Assembly (NCBI RefSeq): GCF_006345805.1
Contig: NC_043002.1
Coordinates: 117,242,001 to 117,306,000 of the forward strand
From: Octopus sinensis
Taxonomy: Eukaryota
Reading direction: 5' to 3'
Length of the DNA stretch: 64,000 nucleotides
Shown: positions 39,801 through 64,000 of the stretch, one piece after another
Layout of the letters: each line of letters opens with the position of its first letter
Position numbering within the stretch: the stretch's first letter is position 1
Position numbers and translations under genes: made by a program
The notes under the pieces: model-generated
What the model was told of the DNA's origin: nothing
Seen by the model: only the letters and a program-made list of their open reading frames with translations
Database searches by the model: none

Positions 39801-40310
39801 CCAAAAGAATACCCTCCATCAGGCATTTGCCATATCCTGAACGCCTTACTTCCCTGGGCATGGACACATTGAAACTCCAATGTCTGGCAGCTGACTTGGC
39901 AGACACCCATAAAATTATCAACCATCGTACAAACAATAACTCTAAGCACCTTTTCAAACTCCACCCATCTAACACCCGTGGACATATTTACAAAGTCAGA
40001 AAACAGCACAGCTCCCATGACTTCAGGAAACATTTTTTCACGCTGAGAGTTGCTGAAGCATGGAACAAACTGCCGGCATCAGTTGTTAGTTGTCGGAGCA
40101 CTGCATCCTTCAAAACTTCCATGCTTTCTGAGATTCGCCAACACTACACCTGATTTTCTCCCCTCCATACACACACAAGCATGTATCTGACTCATACATT
40201 GTTCGCTTTCCAGACACTTTTACATTACTGCATGTACTTTATATGCACTTTCTGACAAGTTGTGGCGCACCTGAGCACTGTATACAATAATTTCATTATT
40301 AATATTATAA
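36803..40310 (+). mobile_element. Near-intact, 5'-truncated CR1-type LINE (ORF1 C-terminus, APE endonuclease + RT ORF2, ATT-rich tail)
   Basis: ORF1 frame is open from about 36805 to 37347. ORF2 (37410 to about 39490) carries LNARS, GDFN, DLLL, SDH, NYRPISLT, KAFD, GVTQGSVLGP and YADD; it frameshifts near 39490 and continues in the 39446-40153 frame. Confidence 0.92.
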
Positions 40311-45200: not shown

Positions 45201-46260
45201 AATTTTGGCACAAGGCCAGCAATTCGCTGGGAGGGGTAAGTCAATTACATCGACCCCTGTACTCAACTGGTACTTATTTTATCAACTCCGAAAGGAAGAA
45301 CGGTAAAGTCAGTTTTGGCAGAATTTGAACTCAGCATTTCACCTGGCGTGCTAACAATTCTGCCAGCTTGTTGCCTTACTCCATATTGATATTATCATCC
45401 TCTTCTAGGTTACAGGAAACATGTATGTGCATAACCTTTTATGTTGAGTGATTCCCTTCCAGGTCTTCTCTGAGACATGATAGCCTTGCACTTTTGGATT
45501 TGAATGAGAAGTTATCAGGAAGTATTTCCTGAGGAATTCACTACCACAGGATGTTATTCATTTCATTTTCAAATGCTTGGCTGGTCTATTTGTTTTCGCT
45601 GCTATTGTTCAGCAGATACTGTCTGAGTTATTTCATACAGCACTCAGAGGCAGTCTGTACTCTTAAGCTTCTTCCCGCTTTTCTTCTGTGCTAGAATCTG
45701 TCCATATCACTGTTTCTATGGAAATTTGCAGTTTACGTCAAGATTTGCATATTTTAATGTCTGTTGGGTAGATTTTCTGTATAGGTCAACTGCATATTCA
45801 AAAGTTGGTATCAGTACAGGCGGAAAGCACTGACTGCCATATCTTTAGTCTAGTTTATCATTCTTTGATTACTCTGTCCTTCTTCACAGTACCTTTGAAT
45901 GATATATTGTCATTAATATCTGGGTATTGATAGCACCATTCATGCAAAGATTTTGGTTTAAGGAAATAGTCTTTCTACATTCACTTTTTAAATTTGAACA
46001 TTTCTTTTGTTCAGACTACATCTTTGTATCAGTGGAAAGAGTTATGAAAGTGCTAAATCTAGCTATGTTTCAGAATTGTAAATATTTCAAATAAAGATCT
46101 TTAGACTGTCAACATACTATTTATGAGTGATACAAGTGTCTTTTACAGTTTTGCAACCTAAGACATAACCATCTTTCATGAAAGAAATGACAGTGTGATA
46201 GGGGCAAAATAAACAGAAGCACAATGAGATTGTCATCTTGCGTGTGTGTGTGTATATACT

Positions 46261-46461
46261 CTTTTACTTGTTTCAGTCATTTTACTGCGGCCATGCTGGA
46301 GCACCGCCTTTAGTCGAGCAACTCAACCCCGGGACTTATTCTTTGTAAGCCCAGTACTTATTCTATCGGTCTCTTTTTTGCCGAACCGCTAAGTGACAGG
46401 GACGTAAACACACCAGCATTGGTTGTCAAGCAATGCTAGGGGGACAAACACAGACACACAA

Positions 46462-46527
<66 letters not shown>

Positions 46528-46686
46528 TACGACAGGCTTCTTTCAGTTTCCGTCTACCAAATCCACTCACAAGGCATTGGTCGGCCCGAGGCTATAGCAG
46601 AAGACACTTGCCCAAGATGCCACGCAGTGGGACTGAACCCAGAACCATGTGGTTGGTAAGCAAGCTACTTACCACACAGCCACTCC
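46261..46686 (-). mobile_element. tRNA-derived SINE, family A, full-length young copy
   Basis: Head GGAGTGGCTGTGTGGTAAG...GGGTTCAGTCCC on the minus strand, conserved body, and central (TA)/(CA) microsatellite. Confidence 0.8.
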
Positions 46687-46799
46687 ATATATATATATAT
46701 ATATATGTACAAGCAGAGATACCTGGCATCACTTGAGATTAGAAACAGGTGATACAGGAAAGTGCAGCATTGATGACAAAACATTTCAGTTTTATATTT

Positions 46800-47050
46800 G
46801 GCATAGTGGTGAAGAGCACGGGCTACTAACCCCAAGATTTTGAGTTCGATTCCAGGCAGTGATCTGAATAATAACAATAATAATAATAACAACAACAACA
46901 TCGAAAAATACCTTAGGAATGAGAACCCAGATTAGAAATTTCCCCAAGACACCTGATGAAGGCTGGAGGGTATAACAGCCGAAACGTTGTGATAACAACA
47001 AACAAGAGAAGACAAATATCTGTCAATTGTAAATAATATAAATAATGGAC
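46800..47050 (+). mobile_element. tRNA-headed SINE, family C (hammerhead-containing)
   Basis: Head GGCATAGTGGTGAAGAGCACGGGCTACTAACCCC...GAGTTCGATTCC. The body is homologous to 21092-21290. Confidence 0.75.
46950..46991 (+). ncRNA. Minimal type I hammerhead ribozyme motif
   Basis: CAC-CTGATGA-A-GGCTG-(10-nt loop)-CAGCC-GAAA-CG-TT-GTG: both conserved core boxes, a perfect 5-bp helix II, a palindromic AACGTT helix III and a 3-bp helix I. Confidence 0.65.
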
Positions 47051-47059
47051 AGAACATTT

Positions 47060-48616
47060 GTGGAGTAAACGATGGGCTAATTCAACTAAGTGACTTGTCA
47101 TTCGTCTGTTTGGAGTCACGGAAAATTGGTGTGTGTGGTGGGGGTATGTGATTTTTGAATGCACTGAAAAGTTGTCAGTGGATATATTCTCCATTGCAGC
47201 GGAATTTAGCGCTGCATCTAACATGACCCATCATCTGAAGTTTTGACACCTCTTTCCGGTTTGTTGTCTTACATCACTCATAAAGAAAATTTGGAGGAAC
47301 TGTGGTTGTTCATTTGTGGGTAACTGGGAACCATTGAGGTGATTGACTTGCTCTTGAATTTTGAATGTTGGCATAAATCCATGCACCAAACGATGTCATT
47401 TGAAATGCAGAGTTGTATTGTCTGATATTGTTCAGAAAATCCTTTGAGACTGGACGGAAATGCCTTCCAGAAAGGGTTGAGGAGGAACTGGTAGTGCTGA
47501 TAATCTTGCCTGAGCAGCGCATGCCATTAGTTTCATTTGGAAATTTTAAAGCTTTGCACAAATGACAATTTTAGTTTAGCACACCAATTTGGACAAAATT
47601 ATTATTTTTATAAGAATGGGGTGGATCCAGGAATTGTGAAGAACAAATTTGTACATAGTCTGTTTCTGAGAGCTATTCTATTGGACTGCTGTCTAATCAT
47701 TAAAACTTCACATTAAAACACTGTTTCAATGATTCAGCATTAAGTGCTGCAGCATTCCTTTGCTGATCTTGAGAAAGTCTCATCTGTATTGAGAGCCCAT
47801 CTGACATGCTGCAGCATTCCTTTGCTGATCTTGGGAAAGTTTCATCTCCCTTCTTTCTTGAGACTCCATTTGATGTGCTGAAGCATGTGTTTACTGATTT
47901 TGAGAAAGTCTCATCTCCTTTCTGTATTAAGACTCTTGCCTTCAATTTTTTACAATCCTCCTTGCCTTATTCTTGTTTCCGGAGAGATTACATCTTTTCT
48001 TTAGTGGCATATTTGTTTTAATATTGTAAACCAAAAACTATGAACATAGAAGGAATTATGCAGTAATCTCTATTATTGTAAGCAGTTGTATGTATGTAGT
48101 ATGTCTTTATTTTTGTTTGCAGTATAAAATAACCAAATAGAAGCACATGTATGAACTGATAATTTAACAGTAAATTTGCAACTGCTGTGATAATTATTAA
48201 CTAATAATTGAATGGTAAATGTGTATTTGTATATACTTTGGACCTGCCGTTTCATTGTTTTTATGTCCAGTTCATTATGTCAGTCAACACACATACACTG
48301 ACACACCATCCTGCTGTCGTGGCCGTAAAGACAGAGAGTTGCCGATGTGTAATGTTGTTCACATTAAGATATAATTAGAATTAAAAGTGAAACAATATTA
48401 TAGTACGTTACAATATAGATGCTATTCTTTCACTTTTGACATGTAATACCGAACCAGTGCCAATGTTGTATTGTTTTAATCCCGATGAAAAAAAATTGCA
48501 TGTTGACACTTATGGGGTCTGATACTATTACCATGTACAATTTGATTTGATTTGGTTGAGCCGTTTGAGAATGCATTGGGAACAGACAGACAGGCAAAGA
48601 ATTTTATCTATATAGA
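47060..48616 (-). mobile_element. Helitron remnant (5' end and start of the Rep/helicase ORF)
   Basis: 5' end A|TCTATATAGATAAAA...TGTCTGTCTG at 48616. Translation CKALKFPNETNGMRCSGK...KDFLNNIRQYNSAFQMTSFGA then GFMPTFKIQEQVNHLNGS...FLQIFF is typical of Helitron RepHel N-terminal regions. Confidence 0.75.
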
Positions 48617-48821
48617 TTAAATATTTTTAAAGTCCAAGCTATACAAGTTAAAAGAAAATAATTACAGGTCAATGACTGACCTCTACTCTCAGAGAAGTCA
48701 GTTATAAACAATTTTTTCTCAGTAAATTTCCTGAAGAAGGAATCCGAACCCTGAAATATTGAAATATCAGGTTAGTACTAACCATCAATCTGTAATTTTA
48801 ACATTTTTGAACTCACATTGA

Positions 48822-48852
<31 letters not shown>

Positions 48853-49488
48853 ATGTGTGTGTGTGCATGTGTGTGTGCGTGTGTATACAATGGGCCCTGA
48901 ATGCAGATGATGTGCGAAGACTAGAGAGGAATAAAGTTGGTGTGCTTTGTTGGATGTGCAATATCAGTGTACACATGTAATGGAGCACTAGTGTATTGAG
49001 AGGAAAGATAGGCATAAGAAGATTATATGCAGTGTGGAAGAGACGAGACTGCACAGGTTTGGTTATGTGATGTGGATGGATGAGGACAGTTGCATAGATA
49101 AGTGCTCATCACTTAAAGTGGAGGGAAGTTGTGAAAGAGGGAGTCCCTGGGAGATATGGGATGAAATACTGAAGGTTGATCTCAAAATGCTCACCTTTAT
49201 GAAGATGACAGAAGACCAAGTTATTACACACATGTGAGTGAGAACACTTTGAGGTATTTTTGGTATCTAACATATGTCAGATACTGCGAGCGCTGCTTCT
49301 GAATGGTCAATCCATGGTGATGACCCGAGGTCACGGTGACAGCGCTGCCTCTGATTGGTCAATCCATGGTGATGACCTGAGGTCACGGTGACGGCACTAC
49401 TTTTGTCATTCATAAGTTACAACTAAACATGAAGAATTTAGTTATTGGGTTAATAAAATATGGTCGTTTATTCGTGTGTAATAAATAA

Positions 49489-49632
49489 AATACCAAACTC
49501 ATTCCCTATGGATACCGTATTTATTACAACTCGTGGCTTGTAAACGTATCTAACTCGCTTTCGCTCGTTAGATATATTTACAAGCCACTCGTTGTAATAA
49601 ATACGGTATCCATAGGGAACTCGTTTGGTATT
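49489..49632. repeat. 144-nt hairpin-forming inverted repeat (70-nt arms, 4-nt loop)
   Basis: Arms 49489-49558 and 49563-49632 pair except for three TC/TC internal mismatches and CpG-decay-type changes. Confidence 0.9.
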
Positions 49633-50619
49633 CTCTATATATGTGACGCATTGCTGTACTCAGGAAGACCTGCCCACCACAACAGAATTGATATCCTGAG
49701 ACCAAGGTGCCATGTAAAAAACATCGGTGTTGGTGCTGGTGTCATAAAACACGCTGGTGCTGATGCCACATAAAAAGCACTGGTGATAGTGCTACATGAA
49801 AAGCAGTTGGCATTAGGAAGAGCATCCAGCTGTAGAAACCAAACCAAAATAGACTCTGGAACCTTATGTAACCCCTATCAGGCCACCCAACCCATGCCAG
49901 CATGGAAAACGGATGTTAAATGGTGATGACGATGATGGTGGTGGTGATGGGCTCTCCTATCATAATGACAGATAAGGGTTTCATTCTGCAACCAAGAACC
50001 CAAGATCATAGTGAGCCACCAGTTTGCTGAACAACCCATACAGATGATTTGTTTATAATGATAAAATATTTGTGCTCACTTCTTCTATCAAATCAACATT
50101 GTCTGTACAAGTGCACAGTGTTCCACACATCAGATGTCAAAGTTATTGCAAACCAAATTGAGAATATTAGGTTTGTCTACCTTACTGGTCCATAGCCAGA
50201 ATAATATGACATCATTTATGACAGATCAGTCTATGGCTAATTTTTAAATTTAGCTATAGAATCATATGTAGATTAATTATTTGTAAAGGCAGCCCATGTC
50301 TTAACGCTTTACAGGATAGTGGTTTTATTGATAAATTCTTTTATAACCATCCTCCTTCTCAACCATATAGATATAGGAATAGGTCCTGCAACCTTTATAT
50401 GGTTCACCCTGCTTTTCTCTCTAAATGATATGTCAAATATAGATATAAAATTCTTACTTTTATTAAAGAAACACTTTCCCCACAACCAAAGTCATAACAA
50501 AATATTTAACAAATTCAGTTAACATTACTTATTTCTGTTTCCCTAATGTAAAAGCCTATATCAACAATTTAACAAATGCCTTAAACTAGTCCTGGGTGCA
50601 CATGCTGAGATAAATCTAC

Positions 50620-50960
50620 GTGTCCTCTAGGATAGGTTGTTGATATGTCCTCCATTGTTTACAAGGCACAAGTAACAGCAAACAACAACACCAGCTGGAC
50701 AGAAACCAAGCACTATAAAGGATCTGTGGAAGGAAAATTTAAATTCAAATACAACCATCTTCCTTTAGGTACTTCAAGAAGAGACATACCACAATCATCT
50801 CAGCATTTATCTTGAAGATTAAGGACACAGGCATCCTACAACGTCAGCTGGGAGATTCTAGGACCAGATCATGTATTAATGGATCAGAAAGTTGTTCTGT
50901 TGGCTCGCTTATTATACTTTATCATTTTGATGAACTTATAAACCTCCTGGGACTGTATAA
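50620..50960 (+). mobile_element. Decayed Penelope-like element fragment (GIY-YIG endonuclease)
   Basis: Translation VYKAQVTANNNTSWTETKHYKGSVEGKFKFKYNH...YNVSWEIL follows the Penelope GIY-YIG pattern; stops are present. Confidence 0.55.
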
Positions 50961-51735
50961 ATACCAAGAATGAAATTTTTCATGTCCACACTTACCATTG
51001 TATATTTTAGTAGGAATTAAATATAAACCAGCAGGCAGAGCGCAACCAATTAATTTGGTTGCAATTCTATGGAGCTCCAATCAGTGAATATATACCACCT
51101 GTACCATCATTTGTGCAGTGGGATATCCTGTTTATACACCACAAATGCGTGAACACTGATAACTCTTGTAACTTCTATTATTCCAACAACCTTTCCACTT
51201 TTTGTTTTTCCTTTCTGCTTGGTTTATGAAATGTTCACCCCCTGTAAGAACCTATCTTTATTAGATAGATGTTCATTGAATTATCTACCTTTCATCACTT
51301 TGTCTTTTTCAAACTACATGGTCTTATTTAAACTTCTCTTAAATCAAACAGAGTTACTACCCACCATACTGACATTACTAATGTGAAAAATAGTGAAATA
51401 AATTTCATATTCCTCCCAGGAAACCCTGAGTAGCTGAATTTCTCACAGTTTTTGTAATGGATATCCATGTAGCAAATTCACATATAACATCAAACAATAA
51501 ATCCATGGCAATTAAGAGCTCAATTAATAACAGGTTGTTAAACTCAAACCTTATTTCATTGTAGTAAATTAATTCAATTTAAATTAATTATGTATCGCAA
51601 TTATGTAATTATGCGTTTGTTTGGTGTTTATCTTAATGAAACTAAAGCTGAGCACAATTAAAGTATGAATTATATGTGAAATTTATGCTTTCCTGCTTTT
51701 ATATGTATATATTCATACACACGTATGCACACACA

Positions 51736-51774
<39 letters not shown>

Positions 51775-52199
51775 TTGTGTGTATGTATGTCTAATGAATT
51801 GCACATAAGTGCTAAATAATAATGTCTGTCTATGCATTATAATATTATGAATTCATTATAATCATATAATTATTAATATTAACATTTATGTCCATAAAAT
51901 GTATTTATCATGTTGTAATGAAACAATTGTAACTACAGAATTAAAAATAATACCATAAATTCCAGTCTTTGTTTCAATATATACATACTCTGTGGCTAAT
52001 ATACTGGACAAGGAATTTCAACTTGTATGAATAGTTTTCTTCATAATCATAAAATATCTTCAAACAGTTGACAGCTGAGATTTGAGATTTGCAGACATGC
52101 TTCATGATAACAGCTCAGACTGTAATCCCTTTTACTCACACACACACACATGTATGTGTGTGTGCAGGCATGTTTGTGTGGTTAAGATGCTTGCTTTGC

Positions 52200-52553
52200 A
52201 AATAATAATAATGATAATAATGAAGTTATTGCATACAGTGCTCAGGTGCACCACAACTTGTCAGAAAGTGCGTATAAAGTACATGCAGTAATGTACAAAT
52301 GTCTGGAAAGCGAACAATGCATGAGTCAGATACAAGCTTGTGTGTGTATGGAGGGGAGACAATCAGGTGTAGTGTTGGTGAATCTCAGGAAGCATGGAAG
52401 TTTTGAAGGATGCAGTGCTCCGACAACTAACAACTGATGCCGGCAGTTTGTTCCATGCTTCAGCAACTCTTAGCGGGAAAAAATGTTTCCAAAAGTCATG
52501 GGAGCTGTGCTGTTTTCTGACTTTGTAAATATGTCCACGGGTGTTAAATGTGG
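52200..52553 (-). mobile_element. 3' fragment of the same CR1 family, inserted in a family A SINE
   Basis: Highly similar to 39970-40305 (NTRGHIYKVRKQHSSHDF...RQHYT*), with an (ATT)n tail at about 52200-52221. Confidence 0.85.
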
Positions 52554-55473
52554 ATTTAAGTTCAGTGTTGCTGTGTGGCACCTTGCACTAGTGTCTTTTA
52601 CTATAGCTTCAGGCTGACCAATGCCTTGTGAAACAATTTGGTAGACAGAAATTGTGTGGAAGCCTGTCGTATGTGTGTATGCTTACCTCCCACTACCACC
52701 ACCACCTGACAACCAATGCTGCTTTATAACTTCGCAGTTTAGCAAAAGAGATCAATAGAATAAGTACCAAACTTAAAATATAAATGCTGATTATCAGAGG
52801 GTATTAATGCAATAAAATTTCCCATGGAAGCCTGCTGCAAGACAATATGGTATGGGAGCTTCTCTCCCCACATTTATTTTACTGAAATCAGTTTACAACT
52901 ATCAAAACTAAACATCAATTACCTTAACCCTTTTGTATCTTATAATAATTCTGCTTGTTCCACTGTTACTTAACCCATCCGTAATGTTTCCACACGATTA
53001 GTTGAAGGGGGAAGGAGGAAGGGGAGAGATGGTGGGGAGTGAAATGTGTAATTTTTTTAAACTAAGTCTTTTTCTCTGTTACTTAGCCCATCTGTAATGC
53101 TTTCATATGATTAATTGAAGGAAAAGGCAAAGAGTTAGTATTTGAACAAATATTATGACAAATGCTTAAATACCGTATATACCCAAACCCAAGTAAAAGT
53201 TGAGTTTTGCAGACCATTTTTTAAGGCTGAATTTAAAGGGTTGACTATCATGTAGATGCTTCTTTTCCTAGGATTGAATTTCGTGTTAAATTTGCATTGT
53301 AATTTTTGTTGGCAAAAGCCTAGTTTGTGTAAATCATTGCAAAACAAAAATATGAAGATTTATGGAAATTTACTTATAGTAATACACATCATCACATGTT
53401 GTGCTATAAAACCCACATTAATAAATCATTACCATGGCCAATATTTTTAAGTAATAACATGTAGTGATACATTCCAGAAGGCTGGTGTAACTAAAATGTT
53501 TCTTTAGTTCTTTCCTCTGTCTCTGGATTTGTTAGGCTGCCAAAACATGTATGTAATGATTCACTGTATTCATATGCTGAATCAGACCTAATAAATTTTA
53601 GGTTGACTTTTTGGCAAGATCAAATATTACTTGAGTATATATTTTGTACATCAAAATGACAACACTGTTTCTGACAATGATCGGCTGTTAGATCGGTTAG
53701 AGTAAAAGATCTAGTATTTAACCCATTAATATTTAAAGTGGCCATATCCAGCCAAAATATTGTACCTGTTTTATTCTCAAACTGGCCAGATCTGGCCTGT
53801 CTGACCTTACTCTACAATATCATACTAGAACTAAACAATCACATCATTGAAATCTTGAAAGTATAAAATATTGTATGAATAATTGAAAACAACCTGAATA
53901 AATAAGCATTGCATTTGAGAGAGTAAGCTGAATGCTGAAGGGTGAAACGAAGATTGTAGGGTAGGACTCTAGCTCAGCTCAGGAGTGTCACCTAAAGATG
54001 ACCAAGGACAATACTGAATCTAAGATGATGAAAGTATTCCAAAAACAAACGCCAGCAACAACCATCATCATTTATTAATATTCTTTTGTGATTTAAGTAA
54101 GAAAAAATAGTTGTAAGCTAATAAATTAAGGGTGGAGGACAAAAAAAATGATAATGTTTTAACTCTTTTACTTTAAAAATTAAATTTCATGGTTATTCAG
54201 ATGTTATGTGTAAGAGAGAAGATTGCACTGGTTTGGTCATGTGATGCATTTGGATGTGGACAGCTGCACAATGAAGTGCGAGCTCTAATTGTGGAGGGTA
54301 TCTGTGGAAGGAATGTAGACCCAGGAAGACATGGGATGAAGTGGTGAGAAAGGATCTTCAGACACTGGGCCTCATTGAAGAAATGACAAGGGACTGGGAG
54401 ATGTGGGGATTTGCTGTCCTTGGTAAGATACATCAAGCTAAGTAATATCACTGTCTTCTACACATACAGGATTGTCCTTTCAGGTGCTGGATGCACACAC
54501 CCATGCCAGTTGCACATAAAAAAAGCTCCCAGCACACTCTGTTAAGTGTTAGGAAGGGCATCCAGTCATAGAAACCATACCAGCTGGAGTCTGGACAGCT
54601 CCCTGCTAGCCAACTCCATGTCAAACCATCCAACCCATGGAAAGCAGATGTTAAATGATGATGATGATGACTCTAACAATGAGGTTAGATATCTACCAAA
54701 AAATAGAATCGGTATTTTCTGCAAGTTATGTTGCCTCAATAAACTTTACATATTCTCAACAGAAAATAGTTTCAAACATGATGTTCCTCAACAAAAATGG
54801 AGTGGTATATAAAACTACTTTCTGCAGTTTAGGATGATAAAAGTCCTAGTGGATATATCTGTTTTCCATTGGTGTAGCTAATAAAAGAGTACATTTTTCA
54901 AAATTGGTGACCTTTCAACAATTGTTTTTACCTCTTTAATTCGCTTGTGTGATAAAAGTTGATCCTCTTTTTTTTTGTTAATTTCATGGCCTTCAAAGTA
55001 CTTTCTAGAGTCATTACTTTATTTGACTGACCTCCTGTGTTTTTGAACTATCTGCTCAATATCCTGTGATGTGTTGGTGGCTACTGACATCTGAAAAACC
55101 AAAACAAACCCTGTTGTCTTAACCTCTCAACACTGGACAATCCTGTAGAGTTACATCTTTTTCACATCACACCTATATTAGTAGTTGTAAGTTTCATATA
55201 TAATGACATTATTACTGAATCATAAAATTAATGAATGTAGAATACAATTATGTATATTATAACTAATGAAAGATTTCACATAATATAAGGGAAATGGGTA
55301 AAAAAAACTATTTGGTATGTGTCTTGGCGCCTTCTTTTATGTGCTCACTCCACCTAACTTTAGAACTTGGTTTTGAGCACCTCTACTAGAAATGTCAATA
55401 AAAGGGTTAAATATTAAATTTTTGTTTCCTTTGTCTTTCAGAGGTTGCTTGATGTAGGTGTTTTACTTCAAAC

Positions 55474-55582
55474 ATGAGCCAAACTCCTAACCAAAATGCC
55501 AAGGCCTTTAAAATATGGAACAGCGAAAGAACTACGAAAAAACCTGTTGTAGCAAGTAATCTGCAAGATTTAGTTTTAAAGG
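55474..55582 (+). CDS. CIDE-N/Myb-SANT gene, coding exon 1 (CIDE-N N-terminal half)
   Basis: Acceptor tttgtctttcag (exon starts at 55442), in-frame TGA upstream of the ATG, and donor gtaaaa (phase 1). Translates MSQTPNQNAKAFKIWNSERTTKKPVVASNLQDLVLK-G. Confidence 0.85.
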
Positions 55583-57163
55583 GTAAAATATTTTTGTAAT
55601 TGTTTTGTATTCAGTAATTTATTACAATATAAAATCAATAATTAAGCAAGATCTGAGGTGAAAATACATAACTACATATTTCTAATTGTTAAAATTGCAA
55701 ACTTAGAAAACATAAGAGTAGCTGATTTTATTGTATTTATAACACAAATTTTAAAAAAATATCTTAGATTGGTTCTTATTAATTCCTTTGCTAAATATTT
55801 ACATAAACTTGTCCTTCTTCCTCAGAATAAAATTTTGTTCTTGTTAATTTATTCCTGCAACCACAAACTATGAGTTGATCAAGAATATCAGTCATGTAAA
55901 CTTCAACTTCTTGCAAAATTTATGAGGACCATGGACACAGTCCCCTTTCTTCACACCAAACCTTTGAACAAAATGAAAGTACAACAAACATTATTTCTTG
56001 AAACAATATTGATATTGTGTGAAGATGGACCCGGGTCTTGCTAAGACCTAGCCTTGGTGATGCTGCATGATAAATATAGATATAATCTATTGACCCTGTC
56101 ATATTGGTTAACAAAAAGAAAGATAACCATAAAAGCCAAAGATATTGAAGAAATCTTCAAAATACAATCAATGGTTATCGTATCAAAATACATGTAAAGA
56201 CATTTGTGTGAAGTCATATTTAACATATTACGGTACATTTGGATATAAGAAAATCTGTTGTTGTGGAAACAGACACAAGAAGAAATTCTCCTCCTGCACA
56301 GTGAATGGCGTCATTGGTTGATAGGACACATGTGTTTATGTCATTCCACTTTCTCAGCTATGAATGCCAAATCTGTCATTCACAGCTCAATCAGTAAAAA
56401 ATCATTCTTATCAAAACCATATATGGTACATTTGTTGAAGTGTGTAAAGCTTGGTGAGACTAAAATTAGATAAATAATGTCACACTAAGCAGCATTGGAT
56501 AAAATATTTTTGTGTAAAATTATATTTAATACATTTGAATGCATTTGGACATGGAGAAGACTTTCTGCTAAGGAAATAGTCCTGACAGAAAATTCTCTTC
56601 CTAGACAGTCCAACCTATGCCAGCATAGATCACAATTAAAACAATGAAGGAACCTCTAAGTATTTAGTTCACCTACTAGAAATGACAACAAAATGCCCCT
56701 CTTATCACATGTTATCATTAAAAACCAAAAGTGAAGGACATGTTGGATAATGTGTACATATATATATAGTTTCTGAAAAAAAAGAGATGTTATTGATTGG
56801 AAAGCCTTTGATCCTAATTCTGATCGATTTTGTGGTTAAACAACAGCAGCAACCTGTTGAAGCATCACTGAAGCTCATGACAAAGAATATGATTTCATTT
56901 TGAAATATATCAAATCCCATAAACTAAATGACAATGTTGATACAACACAGAATGAAGAAAGTGACTGCAAAAATTGTAGAACATGCAGTATTTACTCTTA
57001 TTCTTACATTTCATTTTCATTCTTTCAAAGTTTGACTTTGTGGTTGAGAAATCCCGGTAATATGCTGTACTCCATTTCATTTATACTTCTTGCATTCATT
57101 AACAATTTTGGCCTTCTACTTAAGGATAAAATTAATATTATTTATTGATCTCTTTTATTGTAG

Positions 57164-57325
57164 GAAAACTTAAACTTGGGTTAACCACTGGGACAGATAT
57201 TCGATTAGTTTTGGAAGCTGATGGAACTGATGTAGATGATGAAGATTATTTTGCTCTTCTTCCTAATGATACAGTATTTGTTCTGTTAGAATCTGATGAA
57301 CGATGGCATTCAGCAAATGAAGGAT
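57164..57325 (+). CDS. CIDE-N/Myb-SANT gene, coding exon 2 (CIDE-N C-terminal half)
   Basis: Acceptor ttttattgtag and donor gtaagg (phase 1/1). Translates KLKLGLTTGTDIRLVLEADGTDVDDEDYFALLPNDTVFVLLESDERWHSANEG, with the CIDE-N signature LVLExDGTxVDDEDYFxxLPxxT. Confidence 0.92.
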
Positions 57326-58943
57326 GTAAGGAATTTACCCATGTAATTATAGTAATATTTATAGTAATATTTATTCATTTAAGATACTATGTTCAACATT
57401 GTGTTCATTTTATTTCTTGATTGATTAATAATTCTCTTAATTTTGAGTCGAGATGTTGAGATGCAACAGCTCAGCTCTTGTACTACCAGCATGTGAATCG
57501 AATGTCATAGGAAGGAATCACAAGAGAGATTCTTTAAATTCTGCCAGTTGGCACAAGACATAGGGGCGGACCCATGAGTGAGTTGGTTGGGTAATGTCCA
57601 TAATCTCAGTTGGTCACACTTGGGAATCTGGCCATGAAATGTAATGAGGGTTGCTTCTGATAGGGTATGATGTGAGGCGTCCAGGAAAATTGGGAGGAAA
57701 AAGTGGATGGATAGATGTTGGTGTAGTTTAATATATATCTTTTCTGGATCTTTGCTATCTCCTGCTAGCTGGACCACCAGCAGTACCTTCTTTGGCCAGA
57801 TGCTCAGTTTACTGCTGTCATGAGAGAGAATCGTGCACCTTCAGGAATCTGAGAGGTCCTTCTTAACCTGTTGACCACATGGTGTAGAGTTTGGGTAATT
57901 TTTTACAAATGTCAGCACCATGTAATTATTGTTGTGTGCCCTTCCTTTTATATGGTCAACCATTTCACTCCCTTCCTTCTGATTACTTTGATTGATGAAA
58001 GTGTATGTCATGGGAAGAGATTCTTTTATGGAAGTAATTCCAGACCTATATTGCTTTTCTGTCTTTAGTATTGACCATAGATACTACATTTTGAAAACTT
58101 TTATTGCACAATGTAAAAGAAAGACACACAGAACACACCTACAGACACCCACATGCACACATGTATGTGTGGGTGTGGGCCCGTATATATGCATATGTGT
58201 TTTTATATGTGTGTGTGTATGACTGTACACATATGTGGCAGTGAGATGCAGACACAGCTGTCAAGTGCAGGTATGGTCATGTAATCAAGCAGCTTGCTTG
58301 ATCTTGGGCAGGTATCTTCTACTGTAGCCCAAGACAACTAAAGCCTTGTGAGTGGATTTGGTAGATGGAAACAGAAAGACCAACACATATATACATTTAT
58401 ATCTTGTCTTGTAATGGCATTCACTCAAAAAATAGGTACCAATAATTTAAACATTTTTGCTTCTCTAAATTCAAATATTATTACTTTAGTACATGGAAAG
58501 TTATTGTTGCTATTTTTACTAGTATCTTACACAACACCATCTAATGTGTTCTTTATTTGAGCAGCAACATAGCAGCTCCCTTTTGAGCTGCCCCCAGTAC
58601 TGTCTTAAGGCACAGGCACACTTGGTAGTTGCCTGGATGCTTCATAGGTTTAGGAACTCAAATCTAATCCATGTCTTGCTCTGTTTTGCTGTCAAATTAA
58701 TACTATTGGGCTCAGTGCATTGATTTCCCCTGGGGCCTATGATGCTGCTGGCTACCCCTATGAAGGACCCACTGTTGAGCACCAAAAATTTATTTAGAAT
58801 TGGATGATACATTACCTGTTTTTCCAGAAAACAATTAGGGAAAAAAATTGTTGGTTTTGGGAATATTTAGAAGTTGTCTAAATTGCCAGACGATTTACAA
58901 AATGTCTTCTATAATTGTTGCATTATTTTGCTGACTTTTTCAG

Positions 58944-59785
58944 ATGGAGGAAAGGATGTCAAAGCAATAAAGAATTCTGCAAAGGATATTAACTCTGATG
59001 TGCCTGTTGTAACATCTGTTACCCAACCAGCTATTTCAGTAGCTTCTGCATCACCAATAGATGTTGCCTCTCCTGCTTTACCTCTTCCTCCAGTCTGGTC
59101 TAATCCACCTTCGACAGTTAGTATTGGAAGTACAACTAATGGCAGCACCCCAATAGCTTCAGAGTCTATCCAACTTCCAGAAGAATCTTCTTTCACATCA
59201 AAGAATGGCATCAATATAGCTGATTTCAAGAAAGATGCATACCAATGGAATGAACAGTCAACAAGGCTCTTCATAGAACTTTATAAGCATTATCATGAAC
59301 TTTTTTTGCAACCTAACATTAAAAAAAAGAATCTTTGGGAAGAAATTTCTAAAAAAATGCTTGAGTATGGGTTTGAAATTAGTGCTCGTCAATGTGAAAA
59401 CAAATGGAAATCACTAAAACTCTCTTTCAAAAAAGTTGAAGAATATAATAGAAACTCAGGATTAAAACGAAAGTGTAGCTTCTATGATGAAATCTCAGAG
59501 ATTCTTGGACAATCAAATGTGATTTCAATTAGTTTGGCTAGTACATCATCTAACTCTGCAACTGAAATTCTTGAGAGTTCCACAGAAAAGGTTCGACGCT
59601 TTAAGCCAAAACGACCGCGTTCTTCAGAATGCAGTACTATGGACATTTTGAACTGGCTTAAAGCAAACAAAGAAGAAGAAAAACGCCAACAAGAAGAAGA
59701 CCGCCTGGAAATGCGTAAAATGCATGAGGAAAAAATGAAAGCTTTCTATAGCTTTTTAGATGTACTTAAGAAATGGAAAAGTTGA
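58944..59785 (+). CDS. CIDE-N/Myb-SANT gene, terminal coding exon (S/P/T-rich linker, Myb/SANT-like domain, basic segment, coiled coil)
   Basis: Acceptor gactttttcag (phase 1, compatible with exon 2) and an 842-nt open frame. WNEQSTRLFIELY...KKNLWEEISKKM...SARQCENKWKSLKLSFKK...SFYDEISEILG is a Myb_DNA-bind_4/trihelix-type motif. Confidence 0.85.
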
Positions 59786-60542
59786 GTAAAATAAACAGAA
59801 AGCAGGGAAAAAAACAATATGTTCACACTAATGTTCTCACCAGAACAAAGAATATCTCATGACATTTTATTTTCATCAGATATATCATACATTTCTGCAC
59901 TGTAGCAGTGTCTTGTGTAAAAATCACATCTTGAACAATGGTTATAAGTTTATGAATTGAAAAAATTAAAAATATATTTGTATTTGAATTACTGCATGCA
60001 TAAAAACAGAGAAATACATTTATATATTTTTATATTTAGTTTTGTTATGTATGTAAATTTGATCTTTCTGAAAAACAATAATAGTTTTGGTCAAATTATT
60101 TTATGAAACTCAGCTATTTTCTATTTATTTTACATCCGTTTTCTTGGATGGTAAATTTAATCTCTCACCCAGTTTAACACCACCATCTGGCTCAGAAAGC
60201 ATATCTAGTGTTATTCATTCTGTTATCACTCAGTTTAAAACCTTCAACTGGTCCTTGGATATCTTTTGCTGAGTCCACTTCGTTGCCACTGAGTTGTACA
60301 CTCCCAGCTGGTCCTGGGATATATGTCTTTAGCAGAGTACACTCTGTTGCAAGTATTCAGATCAGATCCCCAGTCTGAGGTTAACTTCTTTTCTTTTCCC
60401 TAGCAGTCTCAGTGACCCTAAAAAGGGGTTATGGGAATTGTTTTTCTTTTCTTAATGATTCAGTATCATAAAATTAAATAAATGAAAATCAGATATGCAT
60501 GGGAAAGGGACAGTGTTTGGAAATTTGGACACTTGCATTATA

Positions 60543-61417
60543 CAAGATGCATTCCAGAAGTTTTGAGACTTTTTCAGTAGTAAACTGATAGTAGGATCCC
60601 TTAACTTCAATGCAATTGTAAAATTCTGGCCACTTAGTAAAGGCCCCATGGAAGTCCTTCTAAGTGAAGATGTCCATAGCCTCCTTCATCTTCTCAATGT
60701 CTCCAAAATGAGTACCCCTGAAATTCTCTTTTAACTTGGAGAACAGCCAAAAGTCTCTGGGGGGCAAGGTTTGGTCTCTTGGGTGAGTAAGGGACAGTTC
60801 TGATGCTCATCTCTGTCAAGCAGTTGATTACCAGGATGGAGTTGTGAATTGGTGCATTGTCCTGGTGCAGGTGCCATCAATCCAAGTCGAAGAGCTCTGG
60901 TCATTTGCGACAAAATCTCTTCCTGCACTCACTGAAGATCTCCACAAAGTACTTTTAGTTGACCATCTGGCCAGAGAGAATGCAGTGGATATAGATGATG
61001 CCCTCACTGCTGAAAAAGAGGAGCATTTTGAGCTTCCCAGTGGACTTACTTTACCTGGTCTTTTCTACCTGCAAAAATCAGGCACAATTCATACAAGTTA
61101 ATCCATAAGCAATCTAGGGCATTTCATAAGAGTTTGTGGCATTTTTGTACAGTTTAACACAAAACTTTACAGCATAACGAGCTTCTAAATTGCATTCACA
61201 TACCAACAACATTTTGCAAATTAGTCAGCTGTGACAAGCAGTGTTTTGTTGGGTGCATTCAAAATGCTATTACAGCCATTTTCTTCAATCTAGAATAACA
61301 AAAGTTGAAAGAACAGCTTATTAGATGTATTGTAATAACATTAAAATTACACAAATTTAGAACAATTATAACTGATTTTCCAAAAAAGATGTTTCAAAAC
61401 TTCTGGAATGCATCTCA
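60543..61417 (-). mobile_element. Internally deleted mariner-like DNA transposon
   Basis: TA-flanked TIRs CAAGATGCATTCCAGAAGTTTTGAGA / TTTCAAAACTTCTGGAATGCATCTCA. Minus-strand remnants HLHQDNAPIHNS and DFWLFSKLK. Confidence 0.8.
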
Positions 61418-61770
61418 TACCTTCTTGGAGCATCAGTTTTTACAGCTAGGCATCCTTGTTGTTAAACACTCCCTCACGAAAAAGAAGTGATCAGGCTTAT
61501 TTTGTAGTTGATGGATAGATGGAAGCAAATATAATCAATGTTGAAGAACATTTACACAATGAATGCAAAAATACTTGAACTCCTGCTCAAGAGGTCATTA
61601 ATCTACCATATTTACACCATAACTATTGTAATGTACTTCAGGTTGACCACTGCCCTAGGATTGAAATTTACTTGATGGAGGAGACTGTATATAAGCCCAT
61701 TGTATATGAGTATGAATATCCATCCATCTGACTGTGTATGTGTGTGTGTGCACGTATGCATATATATACG

Positions 61771-63663
61771 GAGAGGGTCATAGCCCAACTAATTAGAGAG
61801 AGAGAGAGTTAGTTTAGATGAGATGCAGTTTGGGTTCGTGCCAGGGAAAAGTACCACCGATGCTATATTCCTGGTAAGGCAGCTGCAGGAGAAATACCTA
61901 GCCGAAGATAAGCCCCTGTACCTGGCTTTCGTTAACATGGAGAAAGCCTTTGATAGGGTCCCCCGATCCCTCATCTGGTGGTCAATGAGGAAACTAGGGA
62001 TAGATGAATGGCTGGTGAGGGCTGTGCAAGCCATGTACAGAGATGCCGTAAGTAAGGTTAGGGTTGGCAACATGTACACAGAAGAATTCAAAGTAGAGGT
62101 TGGGGTCCACCAGGGTTCAGTACTCAGCCCCCTCCTATTTATCATAGTCCTCCAGGCAATTACGGAGGAATTCAAGACAGGTTGCCCCTGGGAGCTCCTC
62201 TATGCTGACGACCTTGCTCTAATTGCTGAGTCACTATCAGAACTGGAGGAGAAGTTCCAGGTGTGGAAGGAGGGTTTAGAATCGAGGGGCCTTAGAGTCA
62301 ACCTAGCTAAAACCAAAGTACTAATAAGTAGGAAGGTAGACAATCCACAAATGTCTTCAGGAAGATGGCCCTGCTCGATCTGTAGAAAAGGTGTAGGTAG
62401 AAACTCTATAAGATGTACCCAGTGTAAGCTATGGACACATAAGAGGTGCAGCAATCTCAAAGGTAGGCTAACTGGGAAGATAGTTTTTGTATGTGGCAGA
62501 TGCTCGGGAGCATTGACCTCCGAAAATCTGCAGAAAACAACTTCCGTCACTTTCCAGGGGGAAAAACTAGAAGTAGTTGATAGCTTCCGTTATCTAGGTG
62601 ACCAAGTCAGTAGTGGGGGTGGGTGCGCTGAAAGTGTAACTGCTAGAATAAGAATAGCCTGGGCAAAGTTTAGGGAGCTCTTATCTCTGCTGGTGACTAA
62701 AGGCCTCTCGCTCAGAGTAAAAGGCAGACTGTATGATGCATGTGTACGAACAGCCATGCTACATGGCAGTGAAACATGAGCCGTGACTGCTGAGGACATG
62801 CGTAAGCTCGTGAGGAATGAAGCCAGTACTCTCCGATGGATGTGTAATGTCAGTGTACATACTCGACAGAGCGTTAGTACCTTGAGAGAAATGTTGTACC
62901 TAAGAAGCATCAGTTGTGGTGTGCAAGAGAGACGGCTGCGCTGGTATGGTCATGTGGCGAGAATGGATGAAGATAGGTGTGTGAGAAAGTGCCAATCCCT
63001 AGCAGTTGAGGGAACCCGTGGAAGAGGTAGACCCAGGAAAACCTGGGACGAGGTGGTGAAGCACGACCTTCAAACTTTAGGCCTCACTGAGGAAATGACC
63101 AGCGACCGAGACCTTTGGAAATATGCTGTACGTGAGAAGACCAAGCAGGACAAGTGAGCCCAGCCCACTTATGCATGCCTTTCCTCCCTTGGACACACAA
63201 AGACCTGTTGAGGCAAGCGAAGTCGATATCGAACCTCATCCGACGACAGGCACCCATGCCAACCCCCTTGCTTGCGCAGACATGTTGGGGCAAGCGAAAT
63301 CGAAATCGAATTGAACCAGCCAGGATTCCTGGTCTGGTGGTACGTAAAAAGCACTATCCGACTCATGGCCGATGCCAGCGCCGCCTCGACTGGCTTCCGT
63401 GCCGGTGGCACGTAAAATACACCAATCCGACCGTGGCCGTTGCCAGCCTCGCCTGGCACCTGTGCAGGTGGCACGTAAAAAGCACCCACTACACTCACGG
63501 AGTGGTTGGCGTTAGGAAGGGCATCCAGCTGTAGAAACATTGCCAGATAAGACTGGAGCCTGGTGCAGCCTTCTGGCTTCCCAGATCCCTGGTCAAACCG
63601 TCCAACCCATGCTAGCATGGAGAACGGACGTTAAACGATCATGATGATGATGATGATGATGAT
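61771..63663 (+). mobile_element. 5'-truncated RTE-clade LINE, copy 2
   Basis: RT ORF 61823-62779 stops at TGA where copy 1 has TGG (GSETW) and resumes to 63157. 3' UTR and (GAT)n tail follow. Confidence 0.92.
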
Positions 63664-63980
63664 ATATACTGGTCTGTGCAGGTGGCACATAAAAAGCACC
63701 ATCCAAGCAAGATCGTTGCTAGTGCCGCCTGACTGGCCCTCATGCCAGTGGCATGTAAGAAGCACCCACTATACTCTCAGAATAGTTGGTGTTACGAAGA
63801 GCATCCAGCTGTAGAAACCTTGCCAGATCAAACTGGAGCTTTGTTCAGCCTTCTGGCTTGCTATTCCTCAGTCAAACCATCCAGCCCATGCTAGCATGGA
63901 AAGCAGATGTTAAACGATGATGATGATGTATATATATTTATATATGTATATATATATACATATACATATACATGTATATA

Positions 63981-64000
63981 CTAGCAGCTAAGCCCGCTTT
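63981..64000 (-). mobile_element. Possible Helitron 3' terminus at the window edge
   Basis: The minus strand reads ...GCGGGCTTAGCTGCTAG|T: GC-rich subterminal segment, CTAG end and following T. Only 20 nt are visible. Confidence 0.4.

What the first reader, a model, noticed from the sequence alone, without database searches (positions are those of the whole stretch)
55474..59785. CIDE-N domain spliced in frame to a Harbinger/trihelix-type Myb/SANT DNA-binding domain
Seen in sequence: three exons with canonical GT-AG sites and matching phases (1/1) give an uninterrupted 1113-nt CDS (370 aa). The order is CIDE-N (about aa 8-88), an S/P/T-rich linker, a Myb/SANT-like domain, a basic KVRRFKPKRPR segment and a C-terminal coiled coil (KANKEEEKRQQEEDRLEMRKMHEEKM). 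The ORF is intact in a region where most transposons are decayed. Established: CIDE-N is the interaction/oligomerisation module of DFF40/CAD, DFF45/ICAD, CIDEA-C and fly Drep proteins. SANT plus coiled-coil proteins of this type are the DNA-binding partners in PIF/Harbinger transposons and have been domesticated repeatedly (e.g. NAIF1, MSANTD family). I do not know a characterised protein combining the two. Inference: a domesticated Harbinger-type exon captured by a CIDE gene, giving a sequence-specific DNA binder that could oligomerise through CIDE-N or tether or inhibit the caspase-activated DNase at defined loci. No canonical DxxD caspase site is apparent in the linker.
Basis: partly seen in the sequence, partly recalled or inferred. 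Interest (0 to 1): 0.85.

Follow-up and report, generated by a model that had tools for sequence, protein, structure and literature searches.

The report
Cephalopod CIDE-N–trihelix DNA-binding fusion gene
This is a real, spliced, strongly conserved gene of octopuses, argonauts, cuttlefish and their relatives. It joins a filament-forming CIDE-N module, otherwise known from cell-death DNase and lipid-droplet proteins, to a plant-GT-1-like DNA-binding domain. The gene is already in the databases under misleading or empty names and has never been studied.

Summary
Exons 55474-55582, 57164-57325 and 58944-59785 (+), all GT-AG and phase 1, give a 370-aa protein. It has CIDE-N (Pfam E 4.7e-25), a disordered S/P-rich linker, a Myb_DNA-bind_4 trihelix domain (E 2e-19), a basic cluster and a long C-terminal helix.

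The window is Octopus sinensis chromosome CM016864.1, and the protein is identical to XP_029637809.1 (LOC115213045, "uncharacterized").

Orthologues with the same architecture occur in O. vulgaris, O. bimaculoides, Argonauta hians and two decapodiforms. In the decapodiforms, intron-free ~1.3 kb contigs from 15 sequencing runs carry CIDE-N joined in frame to SANT. Both domains are under strong purifying selection; the linker is relaxed. No in-frame ATG can start the SANT domain on its own.

Among 1.84 billion representative proteins, only this cephalopod cluster combines the two domains.

The C-terminal half is homologous to free-standing ~190-350 aa proteins of limpets, corals, hemichordates and starfish.

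A Harbinger origin found no support: no transposase or TIRs here or beside three standalone relatives. The names "DFFA/DFFA-like" are misnomers, because there is no DFF-C domain.

Best reading: a nuclear, polymerising trihelix DNA-binding factor. Control of the caspase-activated DNase remains an untested rival.

The parts
55474..55582 (+). Coding exon 1 (aa 1-36 plus 1 nt). Holds the start codon and the N-terminal basic half of CIDE-N (K10, K13, W15, K22, K23, K36). The donor GT is at 55583.
   Evidence: the tblastn hit of mollusc DFFA-like proteins ends at this exon's 3' end
55583..57163 (+). Intron 1 (GT...AG, phase 1). The junction position is shared with cuttlefish: transcript L007 carries a 31-nt insertion exactly at this junction.
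57164..57325 (+). Coding exon 2 (aa 37-90). Holds the C-terminal half of CIDE-N, including the acidic patch EADGTDVDDEDYF.
57326..58943 (+). Intron 2 (GT...AG, phase 1). Contains a (TG/CA)-rich stretch around 58130-58230 and repeat fragments.
58944..59785 (+). Coding exon 3 (aa 91-370 plus stop). Holds the linker, the SANT/trihelix domain, the basic cluster and the C-terminal helix. There is no in-frame ATG before M229.
57319..59224 (+). Linker, aa 89-184 (the span includes intron 2). S/P/T/A/V-rich, predicted disordered, dN/dS 0.32-0.38.
59243..59503 (+). Myb_DNA-bind_4 (trihelix/SANT) domain, aa 191-277. Conserved Trp at W192, W222 and W245. The model superposes on the GT-1 DNA-binding domain.
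59588..59620 (+). Basic cluster KVRRFKPKRPR (aa 306-316), a candidate nuclear localisation signal. A basic cluster sits at the same place in orthologues and in standalone relatives.
59636..59779 (+). Long C-terminal helix (aa 322-369) with the conserved motif W/FL...MHxEKM..F..FLDvL. It is shared with standalone SANT proteins and is a candidate dimerisation or partner-binding helix.

Best explanation
LOC115213045 of Octopus sinensis is a bona fide protein-coding gene restricted, as far as can be seen, to coleoid cephalopods.

Its product is most likely a nuclear DNA-binding factor. A GT-1-like trihelix domain reads DNA. A conserved basic cluster probably serves nuclear import. Two self-association modules concentrate many DNA-binding domains on chromatin. 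One is an N-terminal CIDE-N domain that keeps both the basic and the acidic faces used for head-to-tail filament assembly. The other is a conserved C-terminal helix inherited together with the trihelix domain. The design parallels SCAN-, BESS-, PB1- or SAM-containing transcription and chromatin regulators.

The gene probably arose before the octopod/decapodiform split. A CIDE-N gene of the short mollusc DFFA-like kind acquired, through phase-1 introns, an intron-poor 'SANT + basic + helix' gene in place of the DFF-C region.

Shown: the gene structure, the splicing in decapodiforms, the domain identities and folds, retention of the interface residues, purifying selection, and the taxonomic restriction.

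Inferred: DNA binding, nuclear location, polymerisation, and the evolutionary route.
For: - The gene model and reading frame are confirmed.
- The protein is identical to RefSeq XP_029637809.1/XP_036360179.1, and the window is 100% identical to CM016864.1.
- Orthologues with the same three-part architecture exist in O. vulgaris, O. bimaculoides and Argonauta hians (87% identity) and in two decapodiforms (70-71%).
- Intron-free contigs of 1.27-1.46 kb from 14 + 1 runs carry the 5'UTR, CIDE-N, linker and SANT in one frame.
- Purifying selection is strong. CIDE-N has dN/dS 0.04-0.06. SANT has pN 0.04 with synonymous sites saturated, and 0 nonsynonymous against 35 synonymous differences between the two decapodiforms. 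The linker is at 0.32-0.38.
- The AlphaFold model has pLDDT >90 for CIDE-N, for SANT and for the C-terminal helix, with the linkers <50.
- Foldseek matches DREP2 CIDE (TM 0.94, rmsd 0.8 A) and GT-1 (TM 0.70, rmsd 1.1 A).
- The residues that form the DREP2 filament interface are K13, W15, R22, K23 and D56, T58, E61, E64, Y65; K13D abolishes oligomerisation (PMC6292858). In the octopus protein they are K13, W15, K22, K23 and D56, T58, D61, D64, Y65 (ungapped alignment).
- The whole SANT + basic + helix half aligns end to end with free-standing proteins of a limpet, corals, a hemichordate and a starfish.
- The nearest CIDE-N relatives include ~200-aa mollusc CIDE-N + DFF-C proteins.
Against: - No experiment of any kind exists for this protein.
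- Spliced octopus transcripts were not seen directly. The octopus evidence is limited to annotation models and cross-species conservation.
- CIDE-N domains are best known for DFF40/DFF45 control and lipid-droplet fusion, not for transcription factors.
- The C-terminal helix has a weak heptad pattern (8/14).
- The affinity of the CIDE-N domain to DFFA-like proteins is marginal: 70-79 bits for many different CIDE proteins.
- SANT-type domains can be protein- or histone-binding modules rather than DNA-binding ones.
Confidence: 0.55

Rival explanations
1. The protein is a regulator or targeting adaptor of the caspase-activated DNase. Its CIDE-N domain would co-assemble with the CIDE-N of cephalopod DFF40/CAD (or DFFA). 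It would either cap and inhibit the nuclease or recruit it to DNA sites chosen by the trihelix domain. It could be a functional replacement of, or partner for, DFFA in cephalopods.
For: - The closest CIDE-N relatives include mollusc DFFA-like proteins with CIDE-N + DFF-C.
- Two genome annotations name the gene DFFA or DFFA-like.
- Both charge patches used in DFF40/DFF45 and DREP heterocomplexes are kept.
- No canonical cephalopod CIDE-N + DFF-C protein appeared in the profile search. That search was not exhaustive, because it also failed to list the query's own cluster.
Against: - There is no DFF-C domain in the protein, in the window or in the 10 kb downstream. This is the part of ICAD held to chaperone and inhibit CAD (my recollection of the literature, not checked here).
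- There is no caspase-type DxxD in the linker.
- The presence of DFF40 in cephalopods was not verified here.
Confidence: 0.25
2. The protein is a non-nuclear CIDE protein, for example DREP2-like at synapses or CIDE-like at lipid droplets, and the SANT-like domain serves as a protein-interaction module rather than a DNA reader.
For: - The best solved-structure match of the CIDE-N domain is DREP2. [quoted passage not shown]
- SANT domains can bind proteins (PMC9392472).
Against: - The domain matches the DNA-binding trihelix of GT-1, with all three signature tryptophans.
- A conserved basic, NLS-like cluster is present.
- The C-terminal half is fully accounted for by the SANT domain and the helix, which leaves no room for a CIDE-C-like region.
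Confidence: 0.12
3. The fusion is an artefact: a transposon-borne (Harbinger) Myb-like ORF that merely lies downstream of two CIDE-N exons and is joined to them by gene prediction or by chimeric assembly.
For: - The region is full of decayed retroelements and mariner fragments.
- Myb/SANT trihelix proteins are encoded by Harbinger elements and have been domesticated repeatedly (PMC9392472).
Against: - The same contiguous ORF is found in 14 independent decapodiform assemblies plus a cuttlefish one.
- The frame is preserved through both junctions in six species.
- There is no in-frame ATG for the SANT domain.
- Purifying selection is very strong.
- There is no transposase and there are no TIRs.
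- There is a single orthologous cluster rather than many copies.
Confidence: 0.02

Closest known systems
Drosophila DREP2, and the CIDE-domain proteins in general (DFF40/CAD, DFF45/ICAD, CIDEA/B/C-FSP27, DREP1-4)
   Same: The N-terminal CIDE-N domain is a clear family member: Pfam 87.9 bits, 42% identity to DREP2 CIDE, model rmsd 0.8 A. The basic (K13, K22, K23) and acidic (D56, D61, D64) faces that drive head-to-tail filaments are both present.
   Different: Everything after residue ~88 differs. There is no DFF40 nuclease domain, no DFF-C and no CIDE-C. Instead there is a disordered linker, a trihelix DNA-binding domain and a long helix.
Short mollusc DFFA-like proteins (CIDE-N + DFF-C, ~200 aa; e.g. 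Liolophura XP_064599201.1, and those of Haliotis and Crassostrea)
   Same: They are among the best CIDE-N matches, at 44-52% identity. They are the likely type of donor of exons 1-2.
   Different: They carry DFF-C (PF09033). The cephalopod protein does not, and no DFF-C-like sequence lies within the window or the 10 kb downstream.
Trihelix / Myb_DNA-bind_4 proteins: plant GT-1, and free-standing metazoan 'Myb-like domain-containing' proteins (Patella KAK6189100.1, Acropora XP_044183694.1, Ptychodera XP_070552455.1, Patiria LOC119719731)
   Same: The SANT domain, the basic cluster and the C-terminal MHxEKM...FLD helix are all homologous over aa ~185-370, at 24-37% identity. The fold matches GT-1.
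   Different: None of them carries CIDE-N. The cephalopod protein is the only one fused to it.
PIF/Harbinger Myb-like proteins and their domesticated derivatives (NAIF1, MSANTD family)
   Same: They share the general SANT/Myb/trihelix type of domain, and this class has a precedent for recruitment into host genes (PMC9392472).
   Different: No link to a transposase, TIRs or a multicopy family was found for this gene or for three of its nearest standalone relatives. Descent from a Harbinger element is therefore not shown.
Oligomerisation-domain plus Myb/SANT-type transcription factors (vertebrate SCAN-domain ZSCAN20/29, insect MADF-BESS) - analogy from general knowledge
   Same: The design principle is the same: a self-associating module joined by a disordered linker to a trihelix- or MADF-type DNA-binding domain.
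   Different: The oligomerisation modules are unrelated, and no homology is implied. This comparison rests on my own knowledge and was not tested here.

Membership tests
CIDE-N domain family (PF02017) | Sequence match above Pfam's gathering score | tested here: met
   87.9 bits against 23.5, aa 10-85, profile positions 2-76 of 76
CIDE-N domain family (PF02017) | Alpha/beta-roll fold superposable on solved CIDE domains | tested here: met
   The AF2 model has pLDDT >90. DREP2 CIDE gives TM 0.94 and rmsd 0.8 A. CIDE-A, FSP27, DREP3 and DREP4 also match.
CIDE-N domain family (PF02017) | Opposed basic and acidic patches used for head-to-tail assembly | tested here: met
   K13, W15, K22, K23 and D56, T58, D61, D64, Y65 align with the DREP2 interface residues. 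Assembly itself was not tested.
DFFA / ICAD (DFF45) | DFF-C domain (PF09033) C-terminal to CIDE-N | tested here: not met
   No Pfam hit in the protein. tblastn with 35 mollusc DFFA-like proteins finds only the CIDE-N exons; the DFF-C parts reach E >= 0.49 across the window plus 10 kb downstream. No DFF-C appears in the flank ORF scan.
DFFA / ICAD (DFF45) | Caspase cleavage sites (DxxD) between domains | tested here: not met
   DxxD occurs only within the folded CIDE-N acidic patch (aa 56-64) in all orthologues.
DFFB / CAD (DFF40) | DFF40 nuclease domain (PF09230) | tested here: not met
   No hit.
CIDEA/B/C | CIDE-C domain that targets lipid droplets | tested here: not met
   The C-terminal 280 residues are fully accounted for by a disordered linker, the SANT domain and the helix. 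PDB CIDE matches stop at about aa 90.
Trihelix / Myb_DNA-bind_4 (PF13837) | Sequence match above the gathering score, with the three signature tryptophans | tested here: met
   70.2 bits against 27. W192, W222 and W245 are invariant or nearly invariant in alignment A3.
Trihelix / Myb_DNA-bind_4 (PF13837) | Trihelix fold as in the GT-1 DNA-binding domain | tested here: met
   Helices at 194-212, 218-231, 238-262 and 271-282. 2JMW gives TM 0.70 and rmsd 1.1 A. The profile matches GT-1 at 6.8e-18.
Trihelix / Myb_DNA-bind_4 (PF13837) | Sequence-specific DNA binding | not testable with these tools
   Needs EMSA, SELEX or DAP-seq.
PIF/Harbinger Myb-like protein (transposon-encoded or domesticated) | Physical or phylogenetic link to a DDE_Tnp_4 transposase, TIRs and target-site duplications | tested here: not met
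   No DDE_Tnp_4 in 40.2-55.5 kb or 59.8-64 kb. No bracketing inverted repeats. None on the three contigs of standalone relatives. An event older than the octopod/decapodiform split would have lost such marks, so this does not exclude deep Harbinger ancestry.
PIF/Harbinger Myb-like protein (transposon-encoded or domesticated) | Nesting within transposon-encoded Myb-like proteins in a phylogeny | not tested

The most novel reading that the evidence does not exclude
Coleoid cephalopods evolved a sequence-addressed CIDE filament. The trihelix domain would nucleate CIDE-N polymers at defined genomic sites. Those polymers would recruit and activate (or sequester) the caspase-activated DNase, giving programmed, locus-specific DNA breaks or protection from them. 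Alternatively, this gene has taken over the DFFA role after loss of the canonical CIDE-N + DFF-C gene in the lineage.
Probability: 0.1. Interest if true: 0.8.

Novelty: new variant of a known kind. Interest (0 to 1): 0.45.

Why it matters
CIDE-N domains are known as filament-forming switches for apoptotic DNA fragmentation and for lipid-droplet fusion. A version fused to a sequence-reading DNA-binding domain would be a new use of that polymerisation module. This version has been conserved across the octopod/decapodiform divergence and was seen only in coleoid cephalopods.

It offers a clean natural test of whether CIDE filaments can organise proteins on chromatin. It is also a candidate lineage-specific regulator in an animal group noted for genomic novelty.

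On the practical side, the database names 'DFFA' and 'DFFA-like' are wrong for this gene. They could mislead inventories of the apoptosis pathway in cephalopods.

Tried and rejected
1. Harbinger origin. I looked for a DDE_Tnp_4 transposase by Pfam-scanning every stop-free segment of 52 aa or more in 40.2-55.5 kb and 59.8-64 kb. Only a LINE reverse transcriptase appeared. I did the same (segments of 50 aa or more) on three 5-6 kb contigs that carry standalone SANT+helix relatives. I also looked for inverted repeats around exon 3. Nothing supported a transposon context.

2. A hidden DFF-C exon. tblastn of 35 mollusc DFFA-like proteins against the window and the 10 kb downstream flank gave no hit for the DFF-C parts.

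3. Whether cephalopods keep a canonical DFFA. The profile search listed gastropod, bivalve and chiton DFFA-like proteins but none labelled as cephalopod. It also missed the query's own cluster, so the result is inconclusive. Two unnamed ~195-aa CIDE-N proteins (P0056, P0058) come from unidentified runs SRR216764xx.

4. Names for the closest SANT relatives. The last word-indexed search was swamped by low-complexity words and returned only 6 proteins.

5. Literature. There were no papers combining CIDE-N with Myb/SANT or with cephalopods, none citing the gene or protein identifiers, and none citing the run accessions. The one octopus paper that mentions DFF40/45 does so only in a pathway-figure legend.

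I worked around this with stop-free segments.

7. Coiled-coil claim. A simple heptad count was weak, so I describe the feature as a helix only.
Full report
**Observation.**
- Exon 1 is 55474-55582 (109 nt, ATG at 55474, donor G|GTAAAA).
- Exon 2 is 57164-57325 (162 nt, acceptor ...TTTTATTGTAG|G, donor T|GTAAGG).
- Exon 3 is 58944-59785 (842 nt, acceptor ...CTTTTTCAG|A, stop TGA).
- Both junctions are phase 1, and the CDS is 1113 nt (370 aa).

An open frame of this length is expected about 7e-5 times by chance in 64 kb of 37% G+C.

**Domain identities.**
- Pfam gives CIDE-N at aa 10-85 (E 4.7e-25) and Myb_DNA-bind_4 at aa 191-277 (E 2e-19), both far above their curated cut-offs.
- The PDB sequence search gives DREP2 CIDE (7e-17), CIDE-A, CIDE-B, FSP27, DFF45 and DFF40 for the N-terminus, and Arabidopsis GT-1 (3.5e-11) for the SANT part.
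- An AlphaFold model built on a 43-sequence alignment has pLDDT >90 for aa 8-88, 185-282 and 322-369, and <50 for aa 90-181 and 283-319.
- Foldseek superposes the first domain on DREP2 CIDE (TM 0.94, rmsd 0.8 A) and the second on the GT-1 DNA-binding domain (TM 0.70, rmsd 1.1 A).

**Source of the window, and what is already on record.** Window 45474-64000 is 100% identical to Octopus sinensis chromosome CM016864.1 (GCA_006345805.1) from position 117,287,474. The 370-aa protein is identical to RefSeq XP_029637809.1/XP_036360179.1, 'uncharacterized protein LOC115213045'. Near-identical proteins are annotated in O. vulgaris (CAI9723676.1, 'DNA fragmentation factor subunit alpha-like') and O. bimaculoides (XP_014776568.1, 'CIDE-N domain-containing protein' in UniProt). 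An 87%-identical orthologue is annotated in Argonauta hians. The sequence is therefore not new to databases, but it carries no functional annotation or a misleading one.

Four lines of evidence point to one transcript.
- A 350-aa orthologue (P0003, 71% identical) is encoded on ~1.3 kb contigs in 14 independent sequencing runs (SRR276660xx; six were fetched as L001-L006). Each contig has a 5'UTR with upstream stops and an uninterrupted CIDE-N-linker-SANT-helix ORF.
- A second contig (L007, ERR4009645) gives the same arrangement. It matches the Acanthosepion (Sepia) pharaonis genome-annotated 'DFFA' over the shared part. Given the 1.6 kb introns in octopus, contigs of this size that span all three coding parts are most simply spliced mRNAs.
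- L007 carries a 31-nt insertion exactly at the position of the octopus exon 1/exon 2 junction. This indicates a conserved intron position and an alternative, frame-shifting splice form.
- Within exon 3 the first in-frame methionine is M229, in the middle of the SANT domain. The open frame extends only 70 nt upstream into the intron, without an ATG. The SANT domain therefore cannot be translated on its own.

I did not see octopus RNA-seq itself. For octopus the evidence is the annotation models plus conservation of the frame through both junctions in six species.

**Selection.** I made codon alignments of the octopus CDS with the two decapodiform transcripts and applied Nei-Gojobori counting.
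- CIDE-N has dN/dS 0.04-0.06.
- In the SANT domain, synonymous sites are saturated (pS 0.7-1.0) while pN is 0.04. Between the two decapodiforms there are 35 synonymous and 0 nonsynonymous differences.
- The C-terminal helix has pN 0.03-0.10, again with saturated synonymous sites.
- The linker is at 0.32-0.38.

Both domains and the helix are under strong constraint, and the linker is a relaxed spacer.

**How widespread is the architecture?** An exhaustive HMMER scan of 1.84 billion representative proteins returned 2492 hits at E of 0.001 or better. A protein carrying both domains would outscore single-domain hits and rank among the best 150 that the tool lists. In a local re-search of the proteins fetched up to that point, which include those 150, with each half separately, only the cephalopod proteins matched both. 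The full-text library returned no papers for CIDE-N with Myb/SANT, for CIDE-N with cephalopods, or for the gene and protein identifiers.

**Origin of the two halves.**
- The C-terminal half (aa ~185-370: SANT, basic cluster and the W/FL...MHxEKM..F..FLD helix) aligns end to end with free-standing 190-350 aa proteins (24-37% identity). The named ones come from Patella, Acropora/Montipora, Ptychodera and Patiria; others are unnamed metagenomic or transcriptomic sequences. The captured unit was thus a whole small gene, not just a domain.
- The nearest CIDE-N relatives score closely together (70-79 bits). They include ~200-aa mollusc DFFA-like proteins with CIDE-N + DFF-C, arthropod CIDE-N proteins of 400-600 aa, and a sea-slug model with zf-CW + CIDE-N.
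- The Sepia genome model P0005 departs from the transcript right after '...PKSG', immediately before the SANT module. This fits read-through into a phase-1 intron at that point (inference). All junctions would then be phase 1, as expected for exon shuffling.

**Harbinger origin.** I could not support this.
- Every stop-free segment of 52 aa or more in 40.2-55.5 kb and 59.8-64 kb was scanned against Pfam. Only a LINE reverse transcriptase with a PHD-like finger (61793-63157) was found, and no DDE_Tnp_4.
- No inverted repeats bracket exon 3.
- Three 5-6 kb contigs that carry standalone relatives have no transposase either, and one has neighbouring host-like CIP2A/PHD matches.

Harbinger Myb-like proteins are indeed of the SANT/Myb/trihelix type and have been domesticated repeatedly (PMC9392472). 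Deep ancestry therefore remains possible. An event older than the octopod/decapodiform split would have lost its terminal repeats, but nothing found here shows such ancestry.

**Not a DFFA.** The protein has no DFF-C, no DFF40 nuclease domain and no room for a CIDE-C domain. tblastn with 35 mollusc DFFA-like proteins hits only the two CIDE-N exons. The DFF-C parts find nothing better than E 0.49 in the whole window plus the 10 kb downstream. DxxD motifs lie only in the CIDE-N acidic patch. The names 'DFFA' and 'DFFA-like' in two annotations are therefore misnomers based on the CIDE-N domain alone.

**Mechanism.** The ungapped alignment with DREP2 lets the published interface residues be read off directly. 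DREP2 K13, W15, R22, K23 on the basic face and D56, T58, E61, E64, Y65 on the acidic face form the head-to-tail contacts, and K13D makes the domain monomeric (PMC6292858). The octopus protein has K13, W15, K22, K23 and D56, T58, D61, D64, Y65. It thus belongs to the two-patch class (DREP2, DREP4, DFF40, FSP27) that self-assembles, rather than the acidic-only DFF45 class.

These features combine with a GT-1-like trihelix that has all three signature tryptophans (W192, W222, W245), a conserved basic cluster (aa 306-316) and a conserved terminal helix. The most economical reading is a nuclear DNA-binding factor that polymerises or clusters on chromatin. I put this at about 0.55.

The main rival (about 0.25) is that the CIDE-N domain engages the CIDE domain of the caspase-activated DNase or its inhibitor, and so targets or restrains that nuclease. 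A non-nuclear DREP2- or CIDE-like role (about 0.12) and an artefact or transposon ORF (about 0.02) are less likely.

It is a new, lineage-restricted variant within two well-known domain families. It is already present in databases but uncharacterised. It would interest people who work on CIDE filaments and on cephalopod gene novelty, but it does not by itself open a long-standing question. Interest 0.45.

Noticed in passing
window 14914-16885: A very regular minisatellite: a 25-bp unit (TTATAAAACTTGTTTTGCTCATGAC) in about 79 copies with 97% matches.
   Followed up: no
window 6035-7709 and 61793-63157 (+): Two copies of one LINE/RTE-like retroelement family. They show near-identical reverse-transcriptase ORFs with a C-terminal PHD/C1-like zinc finger (RVT_1 E 6e-26). 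The first copy is followed by a 61-bp tandem array at 7814-8486, in 11 copies.
   Followed up: partly
window 37410-40153 (+): A long, nearly intact ORF pair (752 aa and 235 aa). By eye it looks like an endonuclease plus reverse-transcriptase LINE. It was not scanned against Pfam.
   Followed up: no
window 34195-34575 (+) and 60697-60876 (-): ORF fragments that look like mariner/Tc1-type transposase remnants (motifs such as 'QANAPSHAAK' and 'HQDNAPIHNS'). They were judged by eye only.
   Followed up: no
L007 (ERR4009645 contig) about 349-380, corresponding to the window exon 1/exon 2 junction at 55582^57164: The cuttlefish transcript carries a 31-nt insertion exactly at the exon 1/2 junction. 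It shifts the frame, which suggests an alternative acceptor or a small poison exon in intron 1. The called ORF then starts at an internal Met (P0004, 310 aa).
   Followed up: partly
P0005 (Acanthosepion pharaonis CAE1322973.1): The genome-annotated 'DFFA' of the cuttlefish is a mis-model. Its first ~110 residues are translated 5'UTR. It reads into probable intron sequence after 'PKSG' and so loses the whole SANT+helix half.
   Followed up: partly
P0069 (Plakobranchus ocellatus GFO42407.1): This sea-slug protein model combines a CW-type zinc finger (I recall zf-CW as a histone-tail reader; not checked here) with a C-terminal CIDE-N domain. It is another possible CIDE-N fusion to a chromatin module in molluscs, or else an annotation artefact.
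   Followed up: no
window 55425-55473: A polypyrimidine-AG (tttcctttgtctttcag) lies about 33 nt upstream of the ATG. This suggests that the first coding exon begins near 55441 and that one or more non-coding 5' exons lie further upstream. RefSeq lists two accessions with the same protein.
   Followed up: no
window 58909-59274 (-): A 121-aa antisense ORF lies inside exon 3. It has no database support, and I take it to be a by-product of the codon composition of the sense strand.
   Followed up: no
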